In this document: positions 9,201-35,000 of the stretch, one piece after another
How the letters are laid out: the number at the start of each line of letters is the position of its first letter
Position numbering within the stretch: position 1 is the stretch's first letter
Assembly (NCBI RefSeq): GCF_037042905.1
Contig: NC_087245.1
Coordinates: 32,984,001 to 33,048,000, forward strand
Direction: 5' to 3'
Length of the DNA: 64,000 bases
From: Lytechinus pictus
Lineage: Eukaryota
The notes under the pieces: model-generated
The model's database searches: none
The model's input: only the letters and a program-made list of their open reading frames with translations
What the model was told of the DNA's origin: nothing
Translations under genes and position numbers: made by a program

Positions 9201-12200
9201 CCATTAAGAGAGAGTTTAAAAATCAATATCCTCAGATAAAGAAGAATCAATCTCTGGAAAGAAAACTTTACTTGTTTTTTTTTTACAAAACTGTTAAAAT
9301 CCCAAACCTTCTTTATCTTCTTCATCTATCTCTTCTGGGGCCCGTTGCAGAAAGAGTAAAAAACGTAAGTAAAAAAATAAATCGCAAGTCCAAAATGCGC
9401 GCTGTTGATTGGTTGAAAATCAAGTTACACATGATTTTTAGAGTTGCGATTGATTGCAACTCTTTCTGCAACGGGCCCCTGACCATTCTGATCCTTGTTA
9501 ACTTACTTTCCTGTTCTCTCCAGCCCTTCGTGCTCTCCGTTATGTCCTCCACCCCCTCCTCCTCCTCCTCCTCCATCTTCTTCATCTATCCCTTCTGCGT
9601 GTCCATTGGGAGTTTGGAAGTGGGACAATCTCTTGGCCTGCGACGGTACCGTCTTGGGCGGCTCAATTCTGATGTTCGGATCCCATGCACCTACAGACAG
9701 AAAAGTATTTTTTAATTAGCTCTTGGGCAACTCATCGCAAATAACCTTAACTTTTTTTTTTATTGGATAGGCACTTAATTGTTAATATGTAAAAGAAGAT
9801 GCTATGTGTACATCACATGTATAATAACTTCTTTTACATAAATATAAAAAAAGCAAAACCGTAAGAGTAATTTTGTAATCTCTGAGTAGAAAAGGAGAAT
9901 GTTACAAGGACACACTGGAGAACCATGCCATATAAATTTTACATGAAGGTATATACAATGTACCAGGGTGATAATGCAACAACATCCATATGTAACTTAC
10001 CAGGTGGAAGAACTGTAACAGAGTCAATGAATTCATCGATGCCTGCAAGAAGGTCCTTGACGTTCTTGGCTTTGTAAGCAACATCATGGAAAATCTAGAG
10101 ATACAGTAGAAAACATTGGATATTTGGGATTTAATCATCTATAGCTTAATTTGCTCTATTTATTCTCAAGCTTCTTGAAAGAAAATAAATATATATGACT
10201 TAACTAAAATGTGCACACACAGAGAAGAAACCTTGAGATTTAACAAACATTGTCTGGTTATTAACATTTTATAAGAGCAGGTTATACTGTTTCGCCTGAT
10301 GCTAGAATATAAGTTTGCAATTCATGACTTTTCTTCAAGAAATTGCAATTCAATTTGTTGTTAGGATCCATACCTTATCTGACATGAGAGTTGCAACGCA
10401 TCTCCCGATCTCATGGTATCGCTTGGTTCCCCCGGACTGCGGGCCGAGGAGGATGAAAAGGAACCTGGTCGGGATGGGGACTTCCGTCAGGTCACCGAGG
10501 GACACCGCCGTCTGGAGGCGAACGAAAGCAATGATCGGACGTGACAGGAAATCCACCTCGCCGATCAAGACGTTGGAGGCCTCCGCACCCTGGGGGATCT
10601 TCCGCATGAAACTGTGCCTGGCCTGGATGTGACGAGAGGGGATAGGAAGAAAAATGAACAAAGCTAAAGGATGTGCCGGTGATTTGACCCTTCTTTCAAG
10701 GGTGTTAGCAAACTGGATAGCATTTGATGAAACCAAGTATCAGTGATTTTTCATTGTACGGTATATGTACTAATCTCCTTGCATTTGATTGGCTCGAAGC
10801 ACGAGTGCCAATGAAAATCACTATGTGTTTACTGAAATGCTTCTCAGATGAAGAAAGAAATTAAAACACAATGTTCTTTCTTTAATCAGGGGCCACTGAA
10901 CTGTTTTGAAAGTTTGGGGGGTGTCTGAAGTCCCCTAAGCTCCCCCTGTTTTGGGGACCCTATAAGTTTATCAAACAACTGCAATGGGGGCAAGCAAGCA
11001 AGCAATGTTCTGAATTTTGCAACTATTATTTAAAGTGATGTTATCTCTTTTTCATATCCCAATGATTTTGTTAATGATCATTTCACTTCATCATTTGAGT
11101 TAAATAAAGCTATCATCTCAAGATTAGAATATGTAAAGCATTATTTGGCCTTGCTTATAAACGGTATTTTAATAGAACAGTCAATGAGTACCTTATCCAG
11201 TCGATATACTCTCCAAAACATCAGTATTACTACTACTACTACAGTTATTAGTATTATTATTACTGTTATTGTTGTTGTTCTTATTATTATCATCATCATT
11301 ATTGCACTGTGTGTAAGCAAGGCCTCAATGTTAACAAAGAGCACATAACATGTTAGTATTGCCATATTCCAACACAAGACACAAATGTAGCAATGCAAAG
11401 ATCATTAGTAAACCCTTTCCCACTCCATGGCGGGTTATACCACATGAAAGAGCTTAATATGTACATGATGATTAAATACATAATTCAGTGCTAGTATGTA
11501 ATGATAACCAAGTGCATGATTGTTAGTATTAATGACAGCAAAAAAAGATTTGTTAGAAATACCCAATCACCAATATGAATATTAAAATGGATATGAAAAG
11601 GAAGAAAGTCACACATTAACAACTAATTACACAGAATTAAAGCGATATATGTGGTAAAATCACCTAGTCAAAAGGAAGAAATGAGCATGAATATGGTTAG
11701 GTATTCAGTTGAATAGGTTCTTTTGTAGATGACCAAGAAATCCTGCGAGTTGGAGGAGGCATTGGTACATGCAGAGAGACATACGATGTGAAACATTGTA
11801 TATTCTTCCCCAGAACCATGACAATACTGAAATCACTATGAGAAGGCAGTACAGTGTACATCAAAGAAAGGAAATAAACACCAAACCAGATATAGGCACA
11901 ACAGTCATGACTACACATTTAAGCAAAGTAATTAGTCATAGAGTTGATGTTTATGATTGATTGCAAATTATCAATACGATCAAACACTCAAACCATCTCC
12001 TCATGGACAATCAATCGCTAAGCTTCATGTTATAGACCCTGGTGGGTGTTTTATAAAGCTGTTCGTAAGTTCGGAGCAACTTTACAAACGGCTAGTGATC
12101 CCCTCTTGTGGTAAATTTTGCGCACCCAATTTTCATAGGTGTTAAAATCAGCTCTTCGGAAAGGATCACCGGTCGTTTGTAAATTCGCTCGTAACTTACG

Positions 12201-15200
12201 AACAGCTCTATGAAACACCCATCGATTTCTCATTTCACAATAATGGTTAACTCTATCACTATGGTAACTACCATAGTGACAGGACACAGCAGCCATTTGA
12301 CACCAAGGTTTCCATGGTAGTTACCATACCCATAATCATAGCTCTTTATTAATCGGGGGCCTCGTGGTTACATAATCCAGGTCAGATTGTATGTTCATTG
12401 CAAGATACATAATTAACCTACCGTAAAAAAAAAGAGACAGAGAGCGTAAAGGTCATAAGAAGTTCTCTCTGAACATCTTATTGTTCCGAAAATTAATTAC
12501 TGTACCTAAACACAGAGCTTGGTTAAAAGAAACATTTCAAAAAAGAAAATCTCTTGAAGAAGTACTGCTTTAAATAAAGAAAGACAAATAGGTGTCACAC
12601 CATCCAGTTGTTAGATCACATCAATATCATCATAAAAAAAGGAAAGGAGAAATGGAAAAAATATATTAAAGAGAAAGAAAATATGAATTAGACAAAGATA
12701 TCAAATTGAATAAGACTAAATGTTACAGGTTGGTGTTCCATAAAGCTTTTCATAAGTTACGAGCAACTGTATGAACGACTGGTGATCCTTTCTTAGAAGC
12801 TTAATCAACACCCAGGAAAATTTGCAGTATATCATTTACCACAAGAAAGAATCACCAGTCGCACGTAAAGTTGCTTGTAGCTTAAGAACAGTTTTAAGAA
12901 CGACTGGTAAACCTTTCTTATGCGCTAAACCATTGCCAGTGAACATTTTGGTGTCTACCATTCACCACAAGAAAGGATCACCAGTCGAACTTAAAGTCGC
13001 TCTTAACTTACAAACAGCTTTATGAAACACCCATCAGGTAAGCACTTGTAAACAAGATTTGCATACTATTGCAAAGTATAAGAAATACAATGCAGCCGTA
13101 CATGTGAAGGTTGCATGAATGTTTCCTGATGGACGAAAGCTTTCTTTTGAAATTTCCATGAACTGTTGCAATTAGTTTTGTAAAGCAAATCCAAAACTTG
13201 TCATCAATATACTCAAAATTCATGTATTACCCAATGTAAGAGTCGTCAACTGCAAACAAACAAATCTATTTTTTTTTTAATGAACATGTTTCAGATTCAC
13301 AAAGATGTAGGTCAATTGTTGATTTGTTTTTGAGGTCTGAGTGGGTGCACTCTAATACAATTGGGACTTTCACACAAGTGCAAGGAAGTAACGCTGTTGA
13401 CGTAGTACCATACCTTTGATGATCGTTTTAATTTAAACGAGTTCTCTGATTTATTAGAATGGAGGGATCCGGATTTACTTGGGACGGAATGGACAGACTT
13501 TGAAAAGTAAAATAAAAAAGGAAGTCATGAAGAAGAAAAAAGAGGCAAACATCAATAAATAAACTATACATCAATCCAGTAATGAAATAGACAGATCTTT
13601 TTGGCAAAATAAACCTGGATCTTTCCCCTTCCCTTTTTTTTTGGGGGGGGGGTATTCTCATACATTGTAAATGTCCAGATGTGAAATTTTATAATCAGCT
13701 TTAATAATATACGTTCATATAAATGTATTAATATTCTTAATATGAACTATTTCTAAGTGCCCCCCCCCCCCCGTTCTGTATTTACTCTGGCAACTTGATT
13801 ATGGCCTGTCCCTGCATTTCCTCTTTTGATCATGGCTATATAATCTTATTTGTTTATTACTAATTTTTCTTACATCAATTAAACAGATAATGGTGTGCTC
13901 TTTATACAAGTGTATTTGATCATTTTTTAGCATGAATAACATGCAATATGACCTCTATCAAAACACATTTTCATATTACTTACTTATTTAAATCTGCCAA
14001 TATTCATGATGAAAAATCTAGATATATTGTAATGTGATTCTAATTAAGTATACAACTTACATGTACAGTGATCTTTTCCAACATGGAAGATAGATAAACC
14101 AAAAATCATATTAATAGTCATTGAATATCAATGAAATTATTAAGTGCAGATGTATATAAAATCACATCAGTGCAGTGTGTACCGTATATAAAAAGAGATT
14201 CAGTCTGTTTATTGATAGAGAAATAGGAAGAATCAACAGCAAACAGTGTGATTACACAAAATATCGTGAATTGTACAAATTAACTGTATTCATTCAATAC
14301 CTTAATGAAAAAAAAAACATTATCTGGAGATATAAGCAAAACACCATATGAACATTAATTCCGCTATTGAGCTTCATATTTTCCATTACTTTGAATTTTA
14401 CGGGTGAGGTCCTCTGGAGACACGACCAGGGTCCCGTTGCATAGTAACTTTGCCATCCAATGGTAACTGCCATGGTAACAAGGCTCAACAGCCAATCAAA
14501 ATCAAGGATTCCATGCGAGTTACCATAGGATAGCAAAGTTACCATAATGGTAACTTTTATTCAATGGGGCCTTTGTGTCGGTTTTAACATCCAAGTTTTG
14601 TACAGTGTATTAAAGGTATCAATTAAACACTTATTTTGATTGGCTAGCTCGCTACATGAATATATTCATTCAAACCAAGGTCACATTACTAGACGCTATT
14701 CCAATAACTTTCTACCACTTAGTCACATTAGCTTACCGTAAACTAGTTACAACTTAATAACTTAATGACTAATAACTAGATAACCTGGAAGTTATTTTAC
14801 TTCATCAATTTTCGCAAGTGAAGGTCATTAAAACAGTTTCCCTCCTTTTTGATGGCACATGTATTTTCAAACTAAACAACAATTACGGTACTGAAAATAT
14901 AGATAAAGTAACACCTTACAAAAACAAAAATACAAAACTGATTTATCTGCCTACCAATATGATAATTCTTAGCAACACCATCAGAGAAGAATAAAAGTAA
15001 AAGTAAGGAATAAGCAGCGAGGATTATAGATTTACAGTCAGACATTGACATTAAGATTTCAAAGGTGTTCAAATAATCACTCATCACAGATAGGAGTGCA
15101 GAATATAGAAATCTGACATTGAAAGTAAATCTAAGTATTAAGTAGGTTTTGAAAGTTGCTTTCGTTATATTCAAAAGTGTGTTTTTTCTTAATAATATTC

Positions 15201-18200
15201 ATTTATACAAAGTAGGAATATCTTTTACCCATTAATAGGTTATATTCAAAAGTGTGTTTTTTCTTAATAATATTCATTTATACAAAGTAGGAATATCTTT
15301 TACCCATCAATAGTTTTTTTTTAGATAATAATTTTGGAGTGAAATAGCCAAGGTAAAAAAAAAATGTTGGTTTTCAATGTAAATTGTATCATGAAATTTC
15401 TTTAGCTCTAGTCATTGACCGGGGGGGGGGGGTAGATAAGAATGGAGTATGAATTATCATGAATGGAGCATGAATTATCAAGATATTAGATTAGGCGATA
15501 ATTTGAATATTTCAACCCCAACCACCATCACTGCAAACGTTGTGTCAGAAAACACATCCCATTATAAGTGCTTTCTAAAAATATACTGTTTAGAACCACA
15601 AATACAATTCTTAACATTTTGCCACACACATTTTCGCTCATAAAACCAAACTTTCACTTTTTCAATCCTTTTGAGAATATTGAGCGTGATAGCAGATGGG
15701 TAATTAGTGTTCCTGAACCAAGAATATCACAAAAATATGTGCCATGTAAACAAAGCGATTGCCATGACAACATACCTTGGACCTCTCAAACCTATCAATA
15801 AGATGCGCTCTGTAAAGTCTTGGTGAATCCACTTTGACCGAGTGGAAAGACTAAAAGTAAACGAACAAATTGTAGGTCAGTAGACATGGATCACAATTTT
15901 TATAATGATCATAAATCAACGATGGATAGAACAAAAATATCATGGACCATGTTGGAACCTTCCGGCATAATCCTGGGATTGCCGTGCGGATCAATTAGGG
16001 TTGTGTTTATACGTGGGTGGTGCTTAAGACAGTTCAGGGAATTTCAATGTTTGATGTATTTTGTCTTTATCAAATCACTGAGTATTGTGTGTGATGGAAG
16101 ATATCTATAAATCCTACTCTAGTGCATTATATGAATTGTGAAATTAAAAAAGTAATGCTTCAACTATTGTTATCTTCTTCTTATAAAATCACTTAAAGCC
16201 AACATGTAAATGTTGCGGTCACCGGTAATGATTGTTTCATGTTCTCTCAAGTATTACACAACCCACATTATCAATCATGTCTATATTTATTTTCTCTGCT
16301 TAAATTTATTGGTTGTTTATCTGTGTATTTATCTTCCTTTTAAAGGTCAAGTCCACCCCAGTGAAATATTGATTTGAATAAATAGAGAAAAATCAAACTA
16401 GCATAACACTGAAAATTTCATCAAAATTGGTTGTAAAATAAAGAAAGTTATGGCATTTTAAAGTTTCACTTATTTTTCACAAAACAGTGATATGCACAAC
16501 TCTGTGACATGCAAATGAGTCAGTCGATGATGTCCATCACTCACTTTTTCTTTTGTTTTGTTATTGTTTGAATTACCGGTATACAATATTTCATTTTTTA
16601 CAGATTTGACCATAGGGACCGACTTGACTGAATCACATAGTATTAAACAATGCTAATTCCACATTTTCAGGGAGAAATTGATCACTGTTTCACTTGACAA
16701 TGAGGAGAAACTTAGGATATTTCATATTTCATGTAATAAAATACAAAAGAAATAGTGAGTGGATGACGTCATCAGTCTCCTCATTTGCATACCAACCAGG
16801 ATGTGCATATAACTGTTTTGTGAAATTAAGCGAAACTCTAAAATGTCATAACTTTCTTATTTTACATCCGATTTTGATGAAATTTTCATTGTTATGGGTG
16901 TTGGATTTTTTACTTTTTACTCAAATCAATTTTTTATTTGGGTGGATTTGTCCTTTAATGTTCTATCAATTATTATTATTACAGACCAATTCTGGGTACA
17001 TGTAGCTTGGTCGGGGAGGGAGACCCTCGGGTCACAGTTATCAAGTTAGCTTTTCCCATACCCAGGCAGCTAAGCTACATGTACCCATCTACGGCTCTGC
17101 TTTTATTCATACTTTGTTGAAATTTTATTGTATATTGTAATTGCCGAATTGATAATAAATAAATAAATGAGATGAAAGTTTTCCCAATACAATCCTATAC
17201 ACTGTAGATGTCTGTAGTACAACTGAAATACACAATACTTCTTTAAAAGGCATGTCTTGAAAAAAAAAAACAATTATAAAAAAATCCCATCCAACTCTGA
17301 CCTGACATTGAGAAACATTTTGGCAGTGTTGTAAATTCAATATTTAACACACTCATGATTAATTTGATAATTAAGACAATAATAAAGGGATAACGTACAC
17401 CCATTACATTTATCTGAACTTGTCAATTGAATTAGTTTTGTGCCCCACAGCAAACTCTGCACAAATCTAGTTATTGTTTTCTTTGAAAGTTGCCTATTTT
17501 TTTTCACTGACATCATTTAACAATATTGTATAAAAGAGTCATGTCACATCATAACAACACACTGAAATGAGAGATAAGGATTCAAGAAATGAAGCAAATG
17601 TGAACTAAAGATGGTAGATTAATTTCTTTTGTTTTATCTCTTTTGTTTTATCTTTTGTTTTATCTCTTCCTAGTTCACTTGTTTTATTTTATTGTGCTCA
17701 ACATCAAACACCATTGAGGTGATACCAGTCTTTGTTTTAGCATAGTGTGGTGCCAAATAAGAAACCCTTGAACAATGCATCTATGAGAGGATTGAAGCCC
17801 GGACTTGTATTGTTAGTAATCATTGTAATCTGAGACAGTTGGGCTATTTGGAACTGTTGAGAGCAAGTTTCTATAGTTAATATCTGTATCACAAAGGCTA
17901 TTGTAATGGTGTTGAAGAAAAGCAAGTTATATACAGAGTACCATATATGGCACTTCAAAAGTATAAAAAGAGACTGTGCCATTAGGTCATTGAAAGTTTT
18001 CCAAACGGATCTATATTGTGGTCAGTAGAGAGACACCCTGTGCAGCAAATCAACTCGTTACCATGGCAACACATACCTTAGATCTTCCATGTCTAAAATC
18101 CAGCTTATGTTTAATGGATTCTGGTTTACCTCTATGATAGGATTCAAGAGACTAAAAAAAAAATGAAATAAAAAAAAGCAAAGATGAATGGTTTATCCCA

Positions 18201-21200: not shown

Positions 21201-22826
21201 GCACTATATTGTTTTTTTACAAGTCATATAAAGAGCAGCGAATTCAAAAAAATAAACACCATGATACCCATTTAAAGCAGAGAAAAGGGTTAAATAATCA
21301 TGCAACAATTGTCAAAGCTGTTATAAACATGAGTAAATATTAGTAAGGTGAAAATTGCATTTATTTTATTTTTAATTATTCATGGCTATCATTTCTAATT
21401 TCATCTTATCATTTTTTTTAAGAGGGGAGTACTGAAACTTGATTCTCGTTTTCTATTTAAGACATTTCAGAATTCAGATGATACATTTTCAACTGCACAT
21501 TTTAATTCAAAATGTTGTTGTGCTAAATATATTATGGTAGAGAAAAGAAACATTTTCTCTAACTGCGAATACAAAGAGATCACTGATGCAACATTAAGAA
21601 ATGCAAGAGGTTTGTAATGGCAACTGGGACTGGTTGCACAAGAAGTCACATTTAAATGCAAATAAAAGCAAATTGAACACAAGTCCTTGCTTCACACTGG
21701 ATGAGAAACAAGTGAAGTTGATTTTCTTCAGGGGCATGTTGTAGAAAGAGTTGTGCTCAAACGCAACTAAAAAAATCAAACGCAATTGTCCCATACCAAC
21801 ATTTCATTGGTTGAAAATTAAGTTTGTGATTGATTTTTGGAGTTACATTTGATCGCAACTCTGTCAGCAACCGGACCCTAAGCGGCATATAAATGCAAGT
21901 TTATGCAGGAGAGCCCTGGACCCTTGACTTATCGTAACTATGGAAATCCTGCAATAATTATCCTCATAATGTTTGTAGAGAGGTTCACTGAAATGATCAT
22001 CATTCATATAATTAATTGATTATGTACATCACTATTTTGGTCAACCATACATGTACATATGTTTCTAATAATATGTCGATAGACTCCAATAGTTGATATT
22101 AAGTGGATCAATCGAAAGTTAGATCTCAGATGTGTGAATGCACATACCAGTCACATTTTTATAGCAAATCTGTAGTCATCTGAACCTGCACAAGCCACTC
22201 ACAAATGCCTGCTGACAGCTCAACAAAAGGGCGTTGAACTTATCTCTTAAAGTTATTAGTATGTCATCGTGAAACATGGAGGTAGAATTATGTAAAGCTG
22301 CATCAATTCTGAACTTCTTACACAGCAGAAACTGCGGTGTTGATTGGTGTATACATAGAGGACATCACCAGTCATTTTACTCTGGTGTTTAGTATTCAGC
22401 GTTAGTTCAACACCCATCATGTTATGACAACACCATTGGCAGTTATTTTACACACTTTGGTGTTATGTTCAACCTCTAGGGTGAAGTTTTGACACCTCAG
22501 GGTGTGATTACAACACCTTTGGTGTTATGTATAATCTCTAAGGTGCAATTTTAACACCTCAGGGTATGGTCCTCTACCAAATGGTGTCAATTTTAACACC
22601 GCAGGGTTTACAATGTGCAATCAGGGGAGTGTTACAAGTGCTACAGTAGCGAATGGTATATTTGTGCTTATAAACACCCATGTTGTCTGCTAGTTTCACG
22701 ATGACATACTACCTTTACAGCTAGCCGAATGAATGCCTTTTCTTATTTTATCGGTAAAAACAGAAGACAACAGTAACGGGACAATACATACAGCCATGCA
22801 GATGGGCATGCAATATCAGAAGGTAA

Positions 22827-22861
<35 letters not shown>

Positions 22862-25800
22862 CACAAACAATTCACATAATGCACATTGAGTGCCATGCAA
22901 ATATATTGGTAGTAGATACAAGAGAGGAAGGGTATATTACAAAGAAGTATTTGAAGAAGAAGTTTTATGGGAAAAATATGACTTTTTTTTTCATTAAACC
23001 ATATGGATGACGTAATAATATTATGAGGAGCTCAGCATTATGGGGAGGGAGGAAGCTGAAATAATTTTATAACATAGGTAGGCATGAACAGGGGCCTGGA
23101 GATTTGATCTACTTTGTATTCAATTTTGCTATCATCTGTAGAAAGAGAATAAATCTCGTATAATGGAGTAAAAGCTAGCAGTTTCCCTTTCACTAAAAAA
23201 AAAATATGTTGCTAAAGTCAGCAATGAATTCCTTTCACTTTTGATCAGACAAAATTCATCTTCCACAGTAAATTACATTATGATATTAGAGCCTATCGAG
23301 AGAAAGGTACATGTACCCCACTTTCATGGCACCACAAATGGTGGAAAAGTAGAAATGAAAACTTTAAATTAGCCTCCAAAATTATCAAGGATGGGAAATA
23401 TTATCTGTTTTGTTTTTGTCGAACTTTGTTTATATTCGCTCGCAAAGGCATGAATCGTGTAGAATTATAATCGAGAATCTGAACTAAATATGAAGATAAA
23501 TTCTGCAAGATTTCGATGGAATTCCCAAGTTATGTCTAGTTTCTTAAGATGTCTGTGAGACCCAGGGAGGGGAAATTTGTAAAACTTCTGGTTCTAAATC
23601 AACCACCTGGGGATAATGGGAGGGTCCCATCAAAATGTTGCAGAATTTATCTTCACAAACTTCAGATTCTTGATTCACAATTCTGTATAATTTGAACAAA
23701 GACTAAATAAAAATAAATAATCTTACTGCTTTTAAAGACATAACCAGTTTGATTTTTCATTTCTAATGATTAAAACATAATTCAATGGGCTTTCGCAATC
23801 GTTTGGTCACAATATATGTTGCACTGAGTCGTACCACCAATTGTGAAAGGGGCTTCAATGGAGGCTCAGAAGCAAGGAAATTGGGGGGGGGGGGGGCGAG
23901 GTCGAAGAATGAATGAGGGGGAGCATGGAGGGGGAAATCAGGATGAGGAAGAGGCACAGAGGAAGGCAGGAGGGGGAACAACAAGCACATATATCATGTA
24001 AAATCCAAGAGCAGTTATCATCTTTAAGAATAAAAAAAAAGATAAATAAAAAGATAAATAAAATTTGTCGAACCGTCATACTAAGACCCTGGAGGTTTTG
24101 CGGCAGAGACATTCTAGCTTCACTCAGTCTTTTCTGTGAGAGGGGGAAAAACGACGCCACAAAAAGCAGCAGCGGAGAAAGAAAAACCATGTCACATCAA
24201 ACAGAATTATATATAGCAAACATCAATATAACACCAAGACCATGCAAATAAATAATGTTAGAATGGAAGTCCTATATATACTAAATAGTGTAGCATCAGT
24301 ATACCGTGATCGACTCCATTCAAATATGATGATAAATACAGGATCTTAAAGGTAGGATATTCATGATATTTCTATTCAATGGAATGATAAAATCTATGGG
24401 AAAATAATTCAAACTTAGTGATGAACTCATTATAGCTTAGCTAACATATTAGTGCATCTAAATTTTTAAAACTGTTTCAATTGTAGGATAATTTGCAGCT
24501 AATTTCTTACTTTTTTTCAGTGAAAGTTTTAGTGAAATGCTTGAATGCATTTAACTATTACATACACTCTTTTAGCAATACATTATAAACAAAACGTTTC
24601 TTTTTAATTGGCAACAGTGAAATTAGCTCACTCTTTTTTAAAACATTCTTTTCATGGTGACATTTCTTGGTCATAATCTGACATACCTGCAAGCATTTTT
24701 TACAAGGATGAAATTTATTAACAACCTTGATGAAAAATGCTTTGTAGAAATTATTTCATTTAGCTTTAATTATTTAATGTCACTTTTCATAGCTGCTTCA
24801 TGAAATTTTTGCAAAAATAAATCAATAAATCGACAACTTAGCAATGATTTATAAAAGCTGATCACCAATTCAATGTGACCAGTGCATTGTGACGAGTTTC
24901 ACTTTAAATCAAAGACTTAAATATTTTCCAAATTATTACGAAAATGGAGTTATGAAAACTTAATGAACAATTTAAAACCAAATAACAAAATCAAAGCTTC
25001 ATCAAAACAGTGCATATAAACATGAAAAGTTTTAAATTCAAAATTCAGGTGCCATTGCTGGATTAGGAGTTCTCACCAAAGCAGGATGGAGGACTTTTTC
25101 ACGAAATGTATTAGTGAATGAAATGACAATGGATACACATGAATGAAAATGTTGTTAGTTACAAATAATGATGCAATGGGCAGATTGTGATGATAATGAT
25201 AAAATGGTGGCAGAGGTGGTTATGATTGAGCATGACGAAAAAGATGATGATGAAAATGATGACAACTACAACAACGATGTTTATGACGAATATTATGACG
25301 ATGATGACTATGACGACAATAATTATGATGACAATGATTATTAAAATTACGATGAAAGTGATGATGATGGTGGTGGGGAAGAGGAAGATGATGATGATGA
25401 TGATCAGATGAAGATGATGATTGATGATACATATATGATGGTGTTGATGTTAATGTTAATGTTAATAAAGCTATCATTTTCTTGGTGATGGTGGCAATGA
25501 AATCATGATTTGAATAGTCATTATCATTCTAACAGCGCTCAAAATAATGCTGTGAAATTTACTCCATATTGTTATATTCATGTTATATATTGTTTCAATG
25601 ATTTCTGAAAGATTCACAAGATTGTGCAATGTCATAATAATGTGATATCTGTGATGAGTTCATCTGCATCACAGAAGATGGTCAGAAGAATGCAAAAATG
25701 TGATGAAATTAAAAAGATAAGTTAACACGATAACTATGCAGGTGAAATGTACATGACCACTGACAGAAGAAAGAGAAGGACATGCACGTACATGTATGAG

Positions 25801-28800
25801 GGTTTATGAAATTAACAAAGGCAGAATGAAACTAAATAAGTTCTTTGTCAATTCTCAGTAATATTCATCCAATGAATACATCACCTTATGAATAACTTCA
25901 ATAGACTATAATTAGATTATACTGTTTTTATGCCCTTTTCTCATCTCATATTGAATTTCAATTATAGAAACCAAAGAAAACCATAATTTAATCCAAAATG
26001 ATATGTTTGAAATTAGCAGGTTGATTAATTACCAAGACAGTTGGTTAAAGTTGATAGAGGATAACTAATTTTCAACTAACAACTCTGATAGGAGCTGGGA
26101 AAGTGGAATGTGACTATTATTAAGTGCATGGAGATGACTAGTGAATGATAAGAGAAAAGAAACAATAAATATCAATCAATGCATCTCATACCTATTTAAA
26201 CACATTTAAAAAAATCAAGTCTGAGAATCAAATTTGTCTGAAATGACAGTATCAATAAAACTGGCACTATTGACAATGAGCAGGGAAAAACTGAAACGGG
26301 TGCTCGGGATAATCTCGCACCTGAAATGGTCAAAAGAGCCATGGAGACTCAAAAGGATGCCCTGGAGCTCCATCCATTGCAATGATATTAAGCTTATCCA
26401 AAGTTGCAGATTTAGGCAGTAAATTGTTGAAGTAACCTCGAAAAGATATATATATATTTATTTTTTTGTAACAATGAGGTATGTGACACATTGAAGAAAT
26501 GAATTGTGGGTGAACACATAAACAAGATGACATGGTGATCACATGGTGAAGTGAGCATGAAAGGAGGGCCAGAATGGAATCCTCAAAAGATGACAAAGAA
26601 CAGAAGGAAAAGTAGAGTGACATGAAAAGGCTCGGCAGAAACAGCAGCTTGGTGCTTTTTCTTTTTCATGACTATGACCACTGAGAGAAAAAATAAATCG
26701 GCTATGACCAGAGAGAAAACGTAATCCAGCCTGCTTTAAAACAGCAAAATTCACCACTAACACCTTCAAAACATCATCAAAAACTCATCAAAACAAGGAT
26801 AACCAACATCAAAACACCTGCAAAACAAGATGACATCTTGACCAAGAAAATGAATTAAATAAATAAAAAAATCATGAAATGGATGGTTACAGCCAGTATG
26901 GTTGCAGGTTGCACGTTGGGGAATAAAAAGGAAAGCAAGGCACAACACCTTTATGGATTTTTATTAAAAAGAATAAACACCGTAAAATAAACGATAAGGG
27001 GAAAAAATGAAATTGGAAGCCAACCGAGAGACTATGTCCGTGTAGGTTGTGCGGGATGGAGAGACGTGCTTCACTGAATCTTTTCTGTGGGGGAGAGAGA
27101 CAAGAAAAAAAAGCCAAGATACATAGAGGGCAGGTGTGTTTGCACTACTACACATTATCCACATCAGGGGTGCTACCACACTTGGTATAAAAAACAAACA
27201 GTGTGGATGAATATACAAAGCACAGTCAAATCAGACTTGCACAGCTCAATGGACAAAAGATGTCACAAGAATTCATGTTTTACATTCATGAATTTTTTTT
27301 CTTCTCCTAAATAACATGTTCCAAAATCAATGCAGAAATTTATTGATATTCAGTTGCTGCACATACATGTTAAAGTATCGCTGCTATGCCAGCTCAATTA
27401 TCTGCGTTAGTTTGGGTTATTCCGTGAAATATTTGTAAATGTAAAATCTGATTTATGAATAAGTGCTGTGTTTATTCATAGGACAGTGTACTTTCAAGTA
27501 AATTCCACACAAGAAAAGTGACATTTCAACAACAGAAATTAGCCTGTTGAATAACAATTGGAAAAGGTACGAGGTGTAGGTTCGTTGTCAAAAAGCGTTT
27601 ACTTGCAAACGTAATTCAGTCCCGCTTCATGTAAGTGAAGGACCATGCATCATTTAATACTGCCCAAAAGTTGCATGAATTGTACCATTCATATTATCTA
27701 CATGTAAATTGATTTCAGACTTGTTAATCATGAGAACGTCATTTCTTCCCATATGGAATTGACTCAAACTAATATTTCAAAACCAACAATAACCAGGAAA
27801 TTTTACATTTACATGTACAGGGCACAAGATATTACACTACAAAGAAGTGATATTTGATGGGGACATTGACAAATTAACAGGTGTAAATATGGGAGCAAAC
27901 TAGAAATCATATTTTACTACTAATATGTTGATAATGACATTACAACATAATGAACAATAGAGGGCAGTATATCCACATTTTTTGTGCAAAGACATGAGAC
28001 TGCATGTATTTCACAACAATTTTTGCTATACAAATCTTCATGAATCTGTATCTACCCAGTACTAAAGGCGATTATAAAAATTACATATCTACATGTAAAA
28101 ACACACAAATGTTCACACAACAATGAAATATGTATTAGAGGGAATTTTGGATTCTTATGAGCAAAAATATTTAAATATATACGACACAATTAATCAGTAT
28201 ACATTAAATTGTTCTTAACTATTATTCCATAAGTAAATGCTTCTACCAAAATAAAAGCCTACTGCAACTAAAATAAAAAGGCCACTTCAATATGATTTTA
28301 ACAGTCAAATAAACAATGCATAAATATCTACACTCGTCATGCATGAAGTTTAAACACTATTATGTATTGTAAAGTACAGAATATACATGTACCACACTAC
28401 CACATAAATTTTAGGCATTTTTTAAATATATCTTATTCATACTAAAACTTAATAGGAAGTAAAGATTAATTCTCACAATAAAAAAAAATCTAATCCATTC
28501 ACAGGCTATTATTGGTGGTTATGATTATGATTATATTTTCCAATTCAATTTTTTAATACTTCACATCGAAACTGTCTGATAACACAGTCAATATAAATAA
28601 TCATTACCTGTATCAGACATCAGGGTCCTGTTTCATAAAACACTTGTTGCAACAACAAATAGACAACAAATTCATTATCAACCAATCAGATTGAACGATT
28701 TCAGTAGCTTTTTACTGTGTTGCAAATTTGTTATCATAACAAGTTTTATGAAACGGGTCCCTGGGCAGGTAATTTACAAAACTGTATTGCCATAGTATTT

Positions 28801-31800
28801 TACGAACATTAGGAATGAATGGGTTAAATGGTTTGTATTTTGCTTAGTCACTCTGCACGCTCTGACTCTGCATGCAGAGACGATGCAAAATATACCTTTG
28901 AATTTTCCATGGATTCGCTTCCGGGAACCTGAAGACGTGTGCAAAGGGATACGCATCAGTTTGAAACAGTTACGTGCAGTAACAACATGCGTCACAATGA
29001 TTGATAAATACGTCACAAAGGTAAAGCTATGAGATATTGGTATAAACATCAATAGTAAAATATCTCCAGGCATCTTTATTATTTTGCTCTATACTGACTA
29101 GCTCTACTTTCAGGGAGCATCAAATATAAAAGAACTTTGTTGCCCTCATCTAAAGACTCGGAACAATATGATTCTGTTCGGAAAACATATTTGGTGTTCC
29201 CCTCAGGCCTTATTCGTCTATTCACATGATGAATTTTATATTACAATTTACATAAGGTAAACTTTGATTTGTATTTTTTAACCTTTGCAATGACTAAATA
29301 TTAAGTGCAAATACACAAATACATGTACAGGTATTCTTGAAATAGATTCTCTTACCAGCTACATTCAAATATGTATTCATTTTCTTCCAATTCAATACAA
29401 ACTTACAAAGTGGTTTGTCAATCGTTTGCCACTGCTGGTAGTGATTACTTTATCCACACATATTTCACAGAGATAAGCCCATCAGGACGTTTCCTTTCCA
29501 AAAATGTCTAGGTTTATAACGATCCCATTCCTTTATCTACTGATGTACATGTAGTATTACATTACTCTCATGTTTTTAAATACTGCACTTTAGAAATATG
29601 TAGGTATATGAGCTGTCCTCTGATTAAAGATTTGTGTTTGTCTTTAAAGAAAGCGTGTAAGCTCCCTCTTTTTATCAAATTTAAGTAACATTAAAGAAAT
29701 TGTGTCAAATGCACTCTTAATAAATTGATGTTACCTTTATAGAAAGCATGCTAACTTCATTCCTCTTTTAATCAAAGTTACCATTGTAAAAAAAACATTG
29801 TTTTTTTAAAAAAACCTTTATAATAAGCATGTGATCTGCCCTCTGTCAATAATTAAGGTTACTTTAAATCCTTAACAAGAAAATGGGGACTAGATCGAGG
29901 TTGGCATAGAGTCAACTTATAAAAGACCTTCCTGGTTATTCCGAACATCGATGAAAGAATCAGGAAAGAGGGCGAGAAACATTAATGTGAAAGAGGATTC
30001 CAATTTTTTTCTCTCTTCATAAAATGACATGATCAATTTTTCATCAGGGACTTTTATAAAAGTCGAAACCAGTTGCTTCTTTTGGGGGTACAGGTGGGTG
30101 ACTCATGATAGCGAATCGATTGTCGGAAAAAACAAAATGTGGTTTGGACCACAACCAAGTGTCTTTAAAGCACCTACATCTCACCAACCTCATTTCCAAA
30201 TGACTATATTTTTTAATGTTCTACAACTTAGAATATAATATCCATTGGAGTATTTCCCACCTGATTGTCATGCAGTATCCTAAATATAACTGATCATTAC
30301 AATATCAAGATATTTTATGTTTAATGTGTATTTAACGTCTGATTTAAACTTGACTTGGAAATCAAACAATTTATTGGCTACACTAACATAATGGATAACT
30401 TCTAGCCGTGTAATGTAAAATTGCACCAATTTACTCATCTCATACCCTACTCTTTGACTAATTTCCAATATTTCACAAAAACAAATTATATATATGTTAA
30501 ATACCAACAGACCCTTAATAGTTCTTTACTGACAACCATTCCTTTTAATGTGTCTTTTCACGCAATATGATCTAGAGCATGAGATAGTTCTAAATGACTC
30601 ACTTCTAATTCACACAAATGTCATAACATGTTTAGGCTTTCCCTGTCAATGTACTGGCAATGCTGTGTTTCATTGTTCATTTCAATGATTCATTGTTGTT
30701 TTTCAATAGTACAGGTCATGACACACACTACCACCTTACAAAAATGTCTGAGAACAAATGTGAACACTTATTTTAACCTTGGTTCTCATTTTCATGTCAA
30801 CGAAAACCTGAAGACATTTTCTATCTACTTCTTGATATTAGTGGCAAAACGATTAAGTACACACTTTAAATTGACTGCATAAATCACCTCATACATCTCT
30901 TTAAAGAGCATCAATTACCTTTTCTACTTTGTGGCTTATAATCACCTCTCATTATATATACGAGCAAGGACATATATCGCCATGGTAGCCAAATCTATAT
31001 CCATGGCAACCTAACAAGCACTAATATCGGTGCGTGGAGATCCTTGGGCAATACAATATTCTTGGTAGAAAAAGATGAAATTCTAACCTCCGTCAACACC
31101 TTGTACAAGAACAGAAAGAGAGAGAGATAAAATGAGATATCAATTATGGTTAGTATTCATCAATCACCATGGTAACGTACCTTTAGACTGTGATGACTTG
31201 AGACCTTGGGGAGACTCCCGGATGCACATGTATCTGACTTGCCTAGTTCACCGGAGCTGGTCTTGACCATGAGTGAGCTAGGGGAGGTTTGGCTGTTCTG
31301 TATGTTAGGGGATGACCCATGGGACGTATGTAGTGCCCCTTGAGCAGCTGGTGGAGTAAAACAAAATAATCATAAAAATAAACAACCATCACAAAATATT
31401 TCTTTAACCCTCCATATATTGTTACAATGATTTTGAAAATATCTTCCAAGTGTGGACCAGGGAGCATTCCATCAACCTGACAAGTTGTCAGATCTGACAA
31501 GTATCCTTGATTGTGACTGACTGAGAAGCAAATGTCTGACTGTTACTATGGTAATCGTCAGAGAATGACATCTTATCAGTCCTGACAACTTTCATGAAAT
31601 GGAATCATGAAGTGATGATGATGATGATAACTTCATAATTATCATCATCATCACCATCATCATCACCATCAATCATCATCATCTATCATCATCATCACCA
31701 TCATCATCATCCTCATCATCATTTATCATCATCATCATCATCTATCATCACCATCATCAATCATCATCATAATAATTTTTTTTAATCTGTAGTAAGAATT

Positions 31801-32010: not shown

Positions 32011-35000
32011 ATTTCTATGACTTTGTCTTTCGTTCTCTCTCTCTTCCTCCCTCCCATTCCCTCTCTCCCTCTCCCTACAATTCAATTAGTTCAAACCTTG
32101 TTGTTCCATGCTTGTATTGTGAGCGCCACCCTGTGAGAGACTGCGTCCGATGTCCGTCAGTGATCTGATCATGGGCAGGAGACTGCTACCCCTCTTGTCG
32201 CGGTGTTTCTTGTGGCTCTGATGATGATGCTTGCGTAGAAGAGCCTCCCGGACCTGTTCTCTCTTGCTCTCATCCAACTGTTCTGACATAATTAACTTGT
32301 CCAGGACAAGATCTAAGGAGGACACAAAAGAGGAGTTCATTTTCACCCACACAAGATAGACACCTACATGTATTTATTTTCTCAGTAGCATCCACTTTAT
32401 GCATATTGGAAGCACTTGGACAGTAGAACTATACAGTTTTTTTTTTTTACTGTATAGCGTGTTGAGCATGTTTAAACAAAAATGTGCTCTATAATGGCAA
32501 AAATGTATGTACAGTATGTTTGCAGGCTTGTCAACTTTTGGGACCAATAGCACCTCTTTAAAAATATCCTGGACCCGCAGCTGTATCTTTGTGTAATGAA
32601 TTTATCACAGAAATTGAAAATAATTGAGGATACCATTATGGGTATCTCCAATCAGAAGTATAACTTAAAATTGACAATCCTCACAATTCAGGTCAAAATG
32701 GGGACAATTTCACATGGCTCACCTGCAATCTGGACTATGTTGTCTGCCTCCATGTCCAGACACACTGTACCGTTAATCAGGCAGTTCCTCAGTTCAAACA
32801 GACTATGAAGAGGCAGTGTCGCTACGTGAGGTTTACTCCATCTGTCTGCATCCACATCTACATCCTCCTCGTACTTTATCCACCTGTTTACAAAGAAGAT
32901 TTTGAAGAAAGGACTTCATCCTGGGTAACCTATTAACAGTTCTCGTGACTTATAATGATTCCACTTTCCCCTACTTAACTTCACCTAAACTTATCTTCAT
33001 CCTGAACATATGAAACTGGTGTCCATCTTGTATCTCTTCTCCATTTGATTTTACCACTCCTAACCTGAGTCTGACCAATCCTCTCTGAAGTCTTATCTAA
33101 AGTCCCCAGCCAGCTTAAGTGTTGTCTTCCCCCTCGACTCTATCCATTCCATTTTATCTGACTAAGCCTAACCAAAAACAACCTGTAACCTTAACCAGAA
33201 GATCATATCCTCAGCATGCTAAACTGTTGCCTACATTGATGTTCTACTCCATCTCATCCCTGACCCTTGATTCATCTTAACCATAGGGCTACAGTGAGGA
33301 CCACTTCCTCAGCATGCTAAAACTATTGCCCAAATTGTCGTCTCTTTTGATTCCCTACTCCCACTTATCCCTGACCCTGATCCATCCTAGCCATAGGGCC
33401 TAATGGAGGGCCACATCCGCAGAATGCTTAACTGCTGGCTACATTGTTACCTCCTCTGATTCCCTACTCCCACTTATCCCTAACCTTGATCTATTGTAGC
33501 CTTGGGCTTCACGGAAGACTACATCCTCAGCATGCTAAACTGTTACCTACCTTGCCATCTCTTTCCACTCAAGCTCTTCCCCGTCAGACCCAACGCAAAG
33601 CTCCTCCATCTCTGTGAAGATCTCATGAGACTCATGACCCTCCTCGGCTTCATCACCAAGGATGAACTTGACCCTCTGAGAAGCATCTCCTGCAAGCAAA
33701 GACAGCATAAGGATTGTGAAAGGATTAAAGGAGTTGTTTCACAAATGGTTTAATGTGACTTCAAGTCATGCATCATACCAATGAACAACCTGCAAGTCAT
33801 TCCAAGTGTGATCTCATTGCTTGACTACCCTTCATCGCCCAAGATGAACTTGACCCTCTGAGAAGCATCCTCTGCAAGCAAAGAAGAGTCAGAGGGGGTT
33901 TCACAAGAGTCCAAAGTCATGCATCATACCAAAGAAAATACAAGTCATTCCAAGTGTAATCTTATCCGTAGACTGCCGTTCATCATCGTGGATGAACCTC
34001 ACTCCCTGTGAAACATCTCCTGTAAGTACGCAGGATATTAAAGATCCAGAGAGGTGTTTCATATAGTCCACAGTGACTTCAAGTCATGCATCATACCAAT
34101 GAACAAACTGTAAGTTACAAGTATTCCATGGGTAATCTACCCGTCATCGCCAAGGATGAATTCAACTTTCTGAGATTGCATCTCCTGCAAGCAAAGAAGG
34201 TATCAAGGACCAAAAGGGTATTGTACTAAGGGATCAAATGAACTTGAAGTCATGCATCATACCAATGAACATACTGTAAGTCATTCCATGGGTAATCTCA
34301 TTGTTAGACTACCCTTCATCACTAAGGATGAACTTAATTTTGTGAGATTGCATCTCCTGCAAGCAAAGAAGGTATCAAGGTCCAAAGGGGTTGTTTATTA
34401 AGGGTTCAAGGTAACTTGAAGTCATGCATCATTCCAATGAACATACTGTAAGCCATTTCTTGTATAAACTCATTGTAACCAGACTCTTCATCACCAAGGA
34501 TAAACTTGACCCTTTGAGAAGCATCTTCTGCAAGCAAAGACGGTATAAGGATTAAATGTGGTGTTTCACAAATGGTTCAAAGTGACTTCAAGTCATGCAT
34601 CATACTAATTAACAAATTGTAAGTCATTCCATGTGTAATATCATTGTTAGACTACCCTTCATCGCCAAGAATGAACTTGACGATCTGTGAAGCATCTGCA
34701 AACACATGGGATATCAAGGATCAAAGGGGTCTTTCAAGGGTTCAAACTGCATGCATAGAGTGAATCCTGACTATGAAGACATCCAAGTGGATATAAATAA
34801 AATAAATAAAAGTTCCTAAAATCTCATTAAGAGACTACCCTATTGTATACTCTACCAAAATTAGGTTTAGGTAGTATTATCAGAAGTCAGGTCCATATGG
34901 GATCATGATCAACAATTGTTTTGTGAATTGTCTATACAGAAACTAGATTGGATAGGATTGGATAGGAATAGCAAAATTCCTACTAAGATTTTTGCTGAGA

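What the first reader, a model, noticed from the sequence alone, without database searches (positions are those of the whole stretch)
24074..27084. Duplicated 60-nt exon pair with protein-level conservation: candidate mutually exclusive exons with a basophilic kinase site
Seen: [20 protein letters not shown] and [20 protein letters not shown] align without gaps (12/20 identical). Several differences are synonymous (GCT/GCA, AGA/CGT, TCT/TCC, CTC/CTA, GGT/GGA). Both have CACAG| acceptors and weak CG|GTT donors, and similarity fades in the introns. That pattern suggests purifying selection on a coding duplicate. KRxS fits a PKA-type consensus (established motif). Mutual exclusivity is an inference.
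Basis: partly seen in the sequence, partly recalled or inferred. Interest (0 to 1): 0.75.

Follow-up and report, generated by a model that had tools for sequence, protein, structure and literature searches.

The report
Duplicated optional exons in urchin bicarbonate transporter
Two 60-base copies of one small exon in a sea-urchin sodium-bicarbonate transporter gene are real, conserved and alternatively spliced, but each is included or skipped on its own rather than in an either/or way, and gene models already contain them.

Summary
On the minus strand, exon B (27025-27084) and exon A (24074-24133) are 60-nt paralogues (42/60 nt, 12/20 aa). Both have CACAG acceptors and the two weakest donors among 16 exons of the gene. 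They are the only two copies in the 812-Mb genome.

They lie in the disordered variable loop (Nt-VR2) of the N-terminal cytoplasmic domain of an SLC4 Na+-coupled HCO3- transporter. The window's exons are 100% identical to Lytechinus pictus RefSeq isoforms. The S. purpuratus counterpart is NP_001073019, not the SpSlc4a10 studied in biomineralisation.

Mutual exclusivity is refuted:
- RNA reads join B to A (9 reads in 3 runs).
- RNA reads join B straight to the next constitutive exon, skipping A (27 reads).
- An RNA contig joins the upstream exon straight to A, skipping B.
- RefSeq models of four urchin species show both, A only, B only and neither, all in frame.

The pair is old. It is present in Diadema, and orthologues are more alike than paralogues. 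Selection is purifying: B against a distant urchin gives pN 0.04 and pS 0.85.

The KRxS motif is invariant, but phosphorylation is untested.

Verdict: tandem-duplicated independent cassette exons, an ordinary kind that is already annotated. The scan noted this same stretch once more (s1-311608) and nothing like it on other DNA.

The parts
27025..27084 (-). Exon B, a 60-nt phase 0-0 cassette exon encoding [20 protein letters not shown]. It is the upstream copy in transcription order.
   Evidence: Translation and splice sites. Spliced mapping of L. pictus isoform X5 at 100% identity. N4->B junction reads 5/28/23, and B->N5 junction reads 13/14.
24074..24133 (-). Exon A, a 60-nt phase 0-0 cassette exon encoding [20 protein letters not shown]. 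It is the downstream copy.
   Evidence: B->A joint 27025/24133 in 9 reads. An X1 contig of 2,726 nt (depth 123) covers 24073-24135 and continues into N4 sequence, skipping B.
24134..27024 (-). Intron between B and A (2,891 nt, GT..AG). It holds an (ATG/GAT)n-type simple repeat at about 25170-25480.
   Evidence: Joint 'skips 2891, CT..AC' on the + strand. Direct-repeat families D3/D4.
31181..31347 (-). Exon N4, the upstream exon that donates to B, to A, or further downstream. It ends ...SSHHSLK.
   Evidence: Spliced mapping. Loose-end consensus at 27086 and 24135 maps to 31183-31212.
10374..10622 (-). Exon N5, the first exon of the conserved Nt-CR2 region ([22 protein letters not shown]...). 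It accepts from B directly in the main form seen in runs X15 and X16.
   Evidence: Loose-end consensus at 27024 maps to 10592-10621.
28896..28928 (-). 33-nt candidate micro-exon encoding [11 protein letters not shown], between N4 and B.
   Evidence: AG/GT-flanked open frame. The identical peptide stands alone between N4 and N5 in L. variegatus isoform X15. It lies outside the stretch where reads were laid, so it is untested here.
18077..18151 (-). Cassette exon C1 (75 nt, [25 protein letters not shown]), from a second, unrelated cassette family downstream of A.
   Evidence: Optional in RefSeq isoforms.
15776..15850 (-). Cassette exon C2 (75 nt, [25 protein letters not shown]).
13414..13497 (-). 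Cassette exon C3 (84 nt, [28 protein letters not shown]).

Best explanation
A and B are tandem-duplicated cassette exons that are each included or skipped independently. The host gene is a sea-urchin SLC4 Na+-coupled bicarbonate transporter on the minus strand, the orthologue of S. purpuratus NP_001073019.

Both exons are 60 nt and phase 0-0. They sit in the intrinsically disordered variable loop (Nt-VR2) of the cytoplasmic N-terminal domain, just upstream of the conserved Nt-CR2 exon. Strong acceptors combined with very weak donors make inclusion optional. Splicing therefore yields transporters with 0, 1 (A or B) or 2 copies of a 20-residue serine-rich basic module, KR-x-S-[ED]-A-R-x-S-x-P-x-N-L-x-G-x-S-x-[ST].

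Shown: the exons, the four inclusion patterns, the age of the duplication and the purifying selection.

Inferred: the module is a short linear regulatory motif, most likely phosphorylated at the KRxS serine by a basophilic kinase. Its copy number and type (A or B) would tune transporter regulation, as optional cassettes do in vertebrate NBCn1/NBCn2.
For: Gene identity:
- Window ORFs are SLC4-like.
- L. pictus isoform X5 maps exon by exon at 100% identity.
- Relatives carry Pfam PF07565 plus PF00955, and the best vertebrate hits are SLC4A7/8/10.

Splicing, with loose ends mapped:
- N4->B: 5/28/23 reads.
- B->A: 2/1/6 reads.
- B->N5, skipping A and C1-C3: 13 and 14 reads.
- An X1 contig (depth 123) joins N4->A, skipping B, and X1 has no depth on B.

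RefSeq and cDNA isoforms:
- Both exons: L. variegatus X1, X2, X5, X6, X9; L. pictus X4, X5, X9, X10; S. purpuratus X1, X2; Diadema X1, X2.
- A only: L. variegatus X8, X14; L. pictus X1, X13.
- B only: L. variegatus X13; S. purpuratus cDNA NP_001073019; two Logan transcript contigs.
- Neither: L. variegatus X10, X11, X15, X17.

Splice sites: the weakest donors of 16 exons, with pyrimidine content 0.89 before the acceptors.

Selection and age:
- A against B gives dN/dS of about 0.27.
- B against a distant urchin transcript gives pN 0.04 and pS 0.85, matching the core-domain exon N5 (pN 0.05, pS 0.78).
- Orthologues are 16-19/20 identical and paralogues 12-15/20, Diadema included.

Known framework: Nt-VR2 is disordered and hosts optional cassettes that modulate activity or bind partners in vertebrate NCBTs (PMC4664831).
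Against: - Junction counts are small. Only about 6% of each raw run was read.
- The N4->N5 all-skipped junction could not be seen in the 6-kb stretch laid.
- Skipping of B in this genome rests on one Logan contig of a run whose RNA status is a guess, plus Gnomon models.
- Many RefSeq isoforms are combinatorial predictions, and not every combination need exist as a full-length mRNA.
- Nothing here shows phosphorylation, or any functional difference between isoforms.
- No similarity to vertebrate cassettes was found: best score 28-30, against a shuffled null maximum of 28 +/- 3.
Confidence: 0.85

Rival explanations
1. Strictly mutually exclusive exons. One and only one of A or B enters each mRNA, swapping two versions of a kinase-site module.
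For: The pair meets the usual predictor criteria for such exons: adjacent, same length, same frame and homologous (criteria in PMC5740500). Usage differs by sample. X1 shows A without B, while X14-X16 show mainly B without A.
Against: B->A junction reads occur in all three raw RNA runs, 9 in total. In-frame isoforms with both exons or with neither are annotated in four species. No enforcing mechanism applies: both exons are 60 nt, the intron is 2,891 nt, both introns are GT-AG, and no selector/docking pairing was found.
Confidence: 0.03
2. A soft switch. A and B are cassette exons whose use is anti-correlated between tissues or stages. One copy is chosen in most molecules, with some leakage to both or neither, so in practice they act as alternative versions. 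B carries His at positions 12, 15 and 17 where A has Gln, Gln and Leu.
For: In X15 and X16, B->N5 (13 and 14 reads) outnumbers B->A (1 and 6). In X1 the high-depth contig has A only, with no depth on B. B-only transcripts occur in three other urchins (the S. purpuratus cDNA and two Logan contigs), and single-exon RefSeq forms exist (L. variegatus X13 and X14). The A-type against B-type differences at positions 8, 10 and 12 are fixed in every species seen.
Against: Only two studies were sampled, and their tissues are unknown because the ids are coded. Contigs drop minor variants. Many annotated isoforms carry both exons. No regulator or RNA structure linking the two choices was found.
Confidence: 0.3
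3. Neutral splicing noise. The duplicated exon copies are tolerated in a disordered loop and have no function of their own.
For: The location is an intrinsically disordered variable region (PMC4664831). The donors are weak. Any combination of these exons keeps the frame.
Against: A is 20/20 identical across Lytechinus and Strongylocentrotus and 17/20 with Diadema. B has pN 0.04 at pS 0.85, as constrained as the conserved core exon N5. Both copies have been kept as distinct types since before the Diadema/camarodont split.
Confidence: 0.05

Closest known systems
Optional cassettes in Nt-VR2 of vertebrate Na+-coupled HCO3- transporters: NBCn1/SLC4A7 cassettes I, II and IV, and NBCn2/SLC4A10 cassette A
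   Same: Same protein family and same region, the disordered loop between Nt-CR1 and Nt-CR2. They are in-frame cassette exons used in combination. A mouse SLC4A7 isoform carries a 20-residue insert immediately before the ...FMRKIP exon, the position A and B occupy here. In vertebrates such cassettes stimulate activity or bind partners, for example calcineurin on cassette II (PMC4664831; PMC4115197).
   Different: No detectable sequence similarity to any vertebrate, sea-star, sea-cucumber or crinoid loop. Here two of the cassettes are tandem paralogues of each other. The module was seen only in echinoids.
Tandem-duplicated mutually exclusive exon clusters (human MXE atlas, Dscam-type arrays)
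   Same: Origin by tandem exon duplication. Equal length, same frame and recognisable homology, with similarity confined to the exon and its splice sites.
   Different: Joint inclusion and joint skipping both occur and are in frame. There is no frame, steric, U2/U12 or RNA-structure enforcement.
S. purpuratus 'sodium bicarbonate cotransporter' NP_001073019 / ABC00768 (Q1A708). From memory, this is the sperm transporter of Gunaratne et al. 2006, Gene 375:37. The paper is listed as a reference in PMC13218627, but the link to this accession was not checked.
   Same: Orthologue of the window's gene. Its loop carries the B-type exon ([20 protein letters not shown]) between the same flanking exons.
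   Different: That cDNA is the B-only form without A or C1-C3. It comes from another species.
SpSlc4a10 of Hu et al. 2018 (PMC5986267), the transporter of skeleton-forming cells
   Same: Same NCBT clade of SLC4, also from a sea urchin.
   Different: A different gene. The antibody peptide of that paper (LTRHRHHKQKK...) matches a fragment type (P0072) that maps to a tandem paralogue about 94 kb away at G000:C1:32890186-32890473, not to the window's gene. No A/B-like exon exists outside the window's gene.

Membership tests
SLC4 Na+-coupled bicarbonate transporters (NCBT clade) | Band 3 cytoplasmic domain (PF07565) followed by the HCO3- transporter membrane domain (PF00955) | tested here: met
   Precomputed Pfam for L. 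pictus and L. variegatus isoforms. Their exons map to the window at 100% identity. Both domains were also called on the Logan transcripts.
SLC4 Na+-coupled bicarbonate transporters (NCBT clade) | Closest vertebrate relatives are SLC4A7/8/10 rather than the anion exchangers or SLC4A11 | tested here: met
   After the echinoderm proteins, the ranked hits are SLC4A7, A8 and A10 at 45-48% identity over the loop-flanking region. No tree was built.
SLC4 Na+-coupled bicarbonate transporters (NCBT clade) | Na+-dependent HCO3- transport activity | not testable with these tools
   Needs heterologous expression and pHi or current measurement.
Mutually exclusive exons | Neighbouring exons of similar length, same frame, with sequence homology | tested here: met
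   60 nt each, phase 0-0, 42/60 nt and 12/20 aa.
Mutually exclusive exons | Exactly one of the exons in each mature mRNA: no joining reads, no double skipping | tested here: not met
   9 B->A joining reads in 3 runs. Isoforms with both exons and with neither exist in four species.
Mutually exclusive exons | An enforcing mechanism: frame incompatibility with NMD, steric hindrance, U2/U12 incompatibility, or competing RNA structures | tested here: not met
   Lengths are divisible by 3. The intron is 2,891 nt. Both introns are GT-AG with pyrimidine tracts. Only weak AT-rich inverted matches were found in 23000-31400. Protein-mediated coordination cannot be excluded.
Cassette (skipped) exons | Both an inclusion junction and a skipping junction observed for the exon, with the frame kept either way | tested here: met
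   For A: B->A against B->N5, in raw reads. For B: N4->B in raw reads, against N4->A in the X1 contig and in RefSeq models.
Basophilic (PKA-type) kinase phosphorylation site | Consensus [RK][RK]-x-[ST] | tested here: met
   KR[LF]S is invariant in all A and B orthologues. The preceding exon ends in K, giving KKRxS.
Basophilic (PKA-type) kinase phosphorylation site | The serine is phosphorylated in vivo, or by the kinase in vitro | not testable with these tools
   No phosphoproteome data were available. This is inference only.

The most novel reading that the evidence does not exclude
A and B are not redundant copies but two fixed flavours of one regulatory module, chosen in a tissue-dependent and largely anti-correlated way. 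B is the histidine-bearing version (His at positions 12, 15 and 17 where A has Gln, Gln and Leu). It could make kinase or partner binding sensitive to cytosolic pH in a transporter whose job is pH regulation. Module number (0, 1 or 2) would set the gain.
Probability: 0.1. Interest if true: 0.5.

Novelty: new member of a known kind. Interest (0 to 1): 0.25.

Why it matters
Optional cassettes in the disordered N-terminal loop are a known means of tuning vertebrate Na+/HCO3- transporters. This locus shows that echinoids independently built a cassette array at the same position, partly by tandem exon duplication, and have kept it for a long time.

It is also a clean counter-example for exon-pair predictors. 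Equal length, equal frame and homology do not imply mutual exclusivity when the length is a multiple of three.

For urchin physiology, in sperm and other tissues using this transporter, the 0/1/2-module isoforms are ready-made variants for testing kinase regulation of bicarbonate transport. The exons themselves are already in RefSeq models, so the gain is interpretive rather than a discovery of new sequence.

Tried and rejected
- Strict mutual exclusivity: rejected by junction reads and isoforms.
- Dispersed repeat family: rejected. Only two copies exist in the 812-Mb assembly by DNA and by protein search.
- A third copy in the window: none. The next-best ungapped match is 30/60.
- Competing RNA structure (docking/selector): only weak AT-rich inverted matches were found.
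- Homology of the module to vertebrate, arthropod, sea-star, sea-cucumber or crinoid loops: local alignment scores are no better than for shuffled peptides, and the motif regex hits echinoids only.
- Search for shorter transcript fragments carrying the loop: only the conserved N5 part matched, so no new echinoid fragments were gained.
- Identification with SpSlc4a10 of Hu et al. 2018: rejected. That protein belongs to the tandem paralogue.
- Canonical 14-3-3 (RSxpSxP), PxIxIT, RVxF and SPAK RFx[VI] motifs were compared by eye with the module, and none fits exactly. No tool test was run.
- Depth over exon A in the raw runs was not used for quantification. A neighbouring low-complexity stretch (24024-24063) and repeat-derived reads contaminate those bins.
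- The Gunaratne 2006 paper is not held in the library, and 'Sp-NBC' gives no hits.
Full report
**Observation.** The window has no N. On the minus strand, 24074-24133 (exon A) translates to [20 protein letters not shown] and 27025-27084 (exon B) to [20 protein letters not shown]. The ungapped match is 42/60 nt and 12/20 aa. Both exons follow a pyrimidine tract ending CACAG| and end CG|GTT. The 60-nt flanks are only 37-38% identical. The repeat unit found independently is 84 nt at 70%, with a spacing of 2,951 nt. Sliding either exon over both strands of the window gives a mean of 15 matches (SD 3.3) and a next-best of 30, so the pair stands alone. In the whole 812-Mb assembly, DNA and protein searches find only these two places.

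**The host gene.** ORFs on the minus strand of the window are plainly SLC4-like. A phmmer search with the exon at 32086-32352 found a 1,218-aa Lytechinus variegatus protein. A word-indexed search then listed echinoderm 'sodium bicarbonate cotransporter 3-like' and 'electroneutral sodium bicarbonate exchanger 1-like' isoforms carrying PF07565 and PF00955, followed by vertebrate SLC4A7/8/10. L. pictus isoform X5 (XP_063956771) maps to the window exon by exon at 100% identity. All junctions resolve to GT-AG introns.

Exon order in the loop, in transcription direction:

| Exon | Coordinates | Length |
|---|---|---|
| N3 | 32312-32097 | 216 nt |
| N4 | 31347-31181 | 167 nt |
| candidate micro-exon | 28928-28896 | 33 nt |
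| B | 27084-27025 | 60 nt |
| A | 24133-24074 | 60 nt |
| C1 | 18151-18077 | 75 nt |
| C2 | 15850-15776 | 75 nt |
| C3 | 13497-13414 | 84 nt |
| N5 | 10622-10374 | 249 nt |

N5 begins the conserved [22 protein letters not shown] block. Every exon between N4 and N5 has a length divisible by three and is phase 0-0. In the nomenclature of the SLC4 review PMC4664831, this is the variable region Nt-VR2 between Nt-CR1 and Nt-CR2. That region is disordered in crystal structures and hosts the optional cassettes of vertebrate NCBTs.

**Which urchin gene it is.** The S. purpuratus orthologue is the cDNA-derived NP_001073019 / ABC00768 'sodium bicarbonate cotransporter'. From memory, this is the sperm transporter of Gunaratne et al. 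2006, a paper I could only see as a reference. It is not the SpSlc4a10 of Hu et al. 2018. That paper's immunising peptide (LTRHRHHKQKK...) is of the type carried by fragment P0072, which maps to a tandem paralogue about 94 kb away on the same contig.

**RNA evidence.** Three ribo-depleted raw RNA-seq runs of the same species label (X14-X16) and one set of Logan contigs (X1) were laid on 22700-28699. Exon reads have the first mate on +, as expected for a minus-strand RNA in a stranded library.
- The only joint inside the stretch is 24133/27025 (skips 2,891, CT..AC on +, so GT..AG on the gene strand). This is B spliced to A, with 2, 1 and 6 reads.
- Loose ends at the B acceptor (5, 28 and 23 reads) map to the 3' end of N4 (31183-31212).
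- Loose ends at the B donor (13 and 14 reads in X15 and X16) map to the 5' end of N5 (10592-10621). This is B spliced directly to N5, skipping A and C1-C3.
- In X1, a 2,726-nt contig of depth 123 covers exactly A (24073-24135). Its continuation is the N4 sequence, so N4 is spliced to A with B skipped. X1 has no depth over B.

B-only, B+A and A-without-B transcripts therefore all exist in this species. In X15 and X16, B-only is the main form. Two limits apply. About 6% of each raw run was read, and the all-skipped N4->N5 junction lies outside what could be laid.

**Database isoforms.**
- Both exons: L. variegatus X1, X2, X5, X6, X9; L. pictus X4, X5, X9, X10; S. purpuratus X1, X2; Diadema setosum X1, X2.
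- A only: L. variegatus X8, X14; L. pictus X1, X13.
- B only: L. variegatus X13; the S. purpuratus cDNA; two assembled transcripts from other urchin RNA runs (SRR6173504 and SRR31798687).
- Neither: L. variegatus X10, X11, X15, X17.

All are in frame. Many of these are Gnomon models, but they agree with the junctions seen here.

**Mutual exclusivity.** The pair meets the predictor criteria used for human mutually exclusive exons: adjacency, equal length, same frame and homology (PMC5740500). It fails the defining one, because joining reads and double skipping both occur. None of the known enforcing mechanisms applies. Lengths are divisible by three, so there is no NMD penalty. The intervening intron is 2,891 nt. 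Both introns are GT-AG with pyrimidine tracts. Only weak AT-rich inverted matches occur in 23000-31400.

What does mark the two exons is splice-site architecture. They have strong acceptors (0.89 pyrimidine). Their donors are the two weakest of 16 exons scored: 4/9 matches to CAG|GTAAGT, and log-odds of -2.7 and -3.3 against -0.0 to +6.7. The position weights for that score were recalled from memory and are approximate. This is the usual signature of optional exons.

**Age and selection.** A is 20/20 identical in L. pictus, L. variegatus and S. purpuratus, and 17/20 identical to the Diadema copy. B orthologues are 16-19/20 identical. A against B is 12-15/20 in any comparison. Type-specific residues at positions 8 (M/L), 10 (L/I) and 12 (Q/H) are fixed in every species. 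The duplication therefore predates the Diadema/camarodont split. By general knowledge this is of the order of 200 My or more, which I did not date here.

Nei-Gojobori counts:

| Comparison | Result |
|---|---|
| A against B | dN 0.27, dS about 1.0 |
| B against the distant transcript L005 | pN 0.04, pS 0.85 |
| Core-domain exon N5 against the same transcript | pN 0.05, pS 0.78 |

With 20 codons the errors are large, but the direction is clear: B is about as constrained as the core-domain exon. The module was not found in annotated isoforms of sea stars, sea cucumbers or crinoids. One crinoid model has an unrelated 11-residue insert at the same junction. Local alignment to non-echinoid loops is no better than for shuffled peptides.

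**Mechanism.** Shown: two paralogous, frame-neutral, weak-donor exons are independently included, giving 0, 1 or 2 copies of a 20-residue module in a disordered regulatory loop.

Inferred: the invariant KRxS (KKRxS after N4) and ARxSxP serines make it a phospho-regulated short linear motif. Copy number and type would modulate the transporter, as cassettes II and IV stimulate NBCn1 and cassette II binds calcineurin (PMC4664831; PMC4115197). I put about 0.85 on the splicing description and about 0.5 on phosphorylation by a basophilic kinase being the function.

A variant worth testing is a soft switch. X1 shows A without B, whereas X14-X16 and three other urchin transcripts show B without A. B also carries histidines where A has Gln or Leu.

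**Novelty and verdict.** The exons and their combinations are already in RefSeq models, though I found no paper describing them. One search on sea-urchin Slc4a10 and biomineralisation surfaced Hu et al. 2018, whose text has no hit for 'splic' and nothing on transporter isoforms. Searches aimed at the S. purpuratus sperm transporter found only a citation of it. The kind is well known: optional cassettes in Nt-VR2 of an NCBT, and tandem exon duplication. The earlier scan notes on this window (the C1-C3 family, the palindromes after some donors, the SLC4 identification) are consistent with what I found. The scan holds the same stretch noted a second time (s1-311608) and nothing like it on other DNA.

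Noticed in passing
window 28896-28928 (-): 33-nt AG/GT-flanked open frame encoding [11 protein letters not shown]. The identical peptide is the sole insert between N4 and N5 in L. variegatus isoform X15, so it is probably a conserved micro-exon. It lies just outside the stretch where reads were laid.
   Followed up: partly
window 31160-31180, 18056-18076, 15755-15775 (-): Directly after the donors of N4, C1 and C2 stand near-palindromes of the GTTGCCATGG(T/C)AAC type: GTACGTTACCATGGTGA, GTATGTGTTGCCATGGTAAC and GTATGTTGTCATGGCAAT. The donors of A and B lack them. Because the copies are self-complementary, they could pair with each other in the pre-mRNA and loop out the exons between them. This is untested, and it is the subject of scan note s1-311687.
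   Followed up: partly
G000:C1:32888742-32890473 (-), about 94 kb beyond the window's low end: A tandem paralogous NCBT gene. It is 63% identical in the N5-equivalent exon. It carries the LTRHRHHKQKK-type sequence used as the SpSlc4a10 antigen in Hu et al. 2018. It has no A/B-like exon detectable by the genome search.
   Followed up: partly
window 26390-26421 and 23802-23855: Two short segments attract very deep read and contig coverage: up to about 2,600x word depth in X1, and 30-55 reads per raw run. Those reads fit only over about 30-50 nt and run on into unrelated sequence. At 26390-26421 they mostly lie in the orientation opposite to the gene. They are most likely pieces of a repeat or of an abundant RNA encoded elsewhere.
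   Followed up: no
window 28621-28763: MITE-like element with 21-nt terminal inverted repeats (CAGGGTCCTGTTTCATAAAAC / GTTTTATGAAACGGGTCCCTG, 90% complementary). Reads that end at 28665 and continue into sequence absent from the window suggest other, transcribed copies.
   Followed up: no
window 25168-25477: GAT/ATG-rich simple repeat inside the B-A intron. It creates long Asp-, His- or Met-rich ORFs on both strands. No read coverage was seen apart from a trace in X16.
   Followed up: no
mouse and squirrel SLC4A7 isoforms P0264, P0232: Mammalian NBCn1 isoforms carry a 20-residue insert (ESASWHCSCGTLGVGLK.PA) immediately before the VDMNFMRKIP exon. This is the junction where the urchin cassette array sits, so it appears to be a recurrent insertion point for optional exons.
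   Followed up: no
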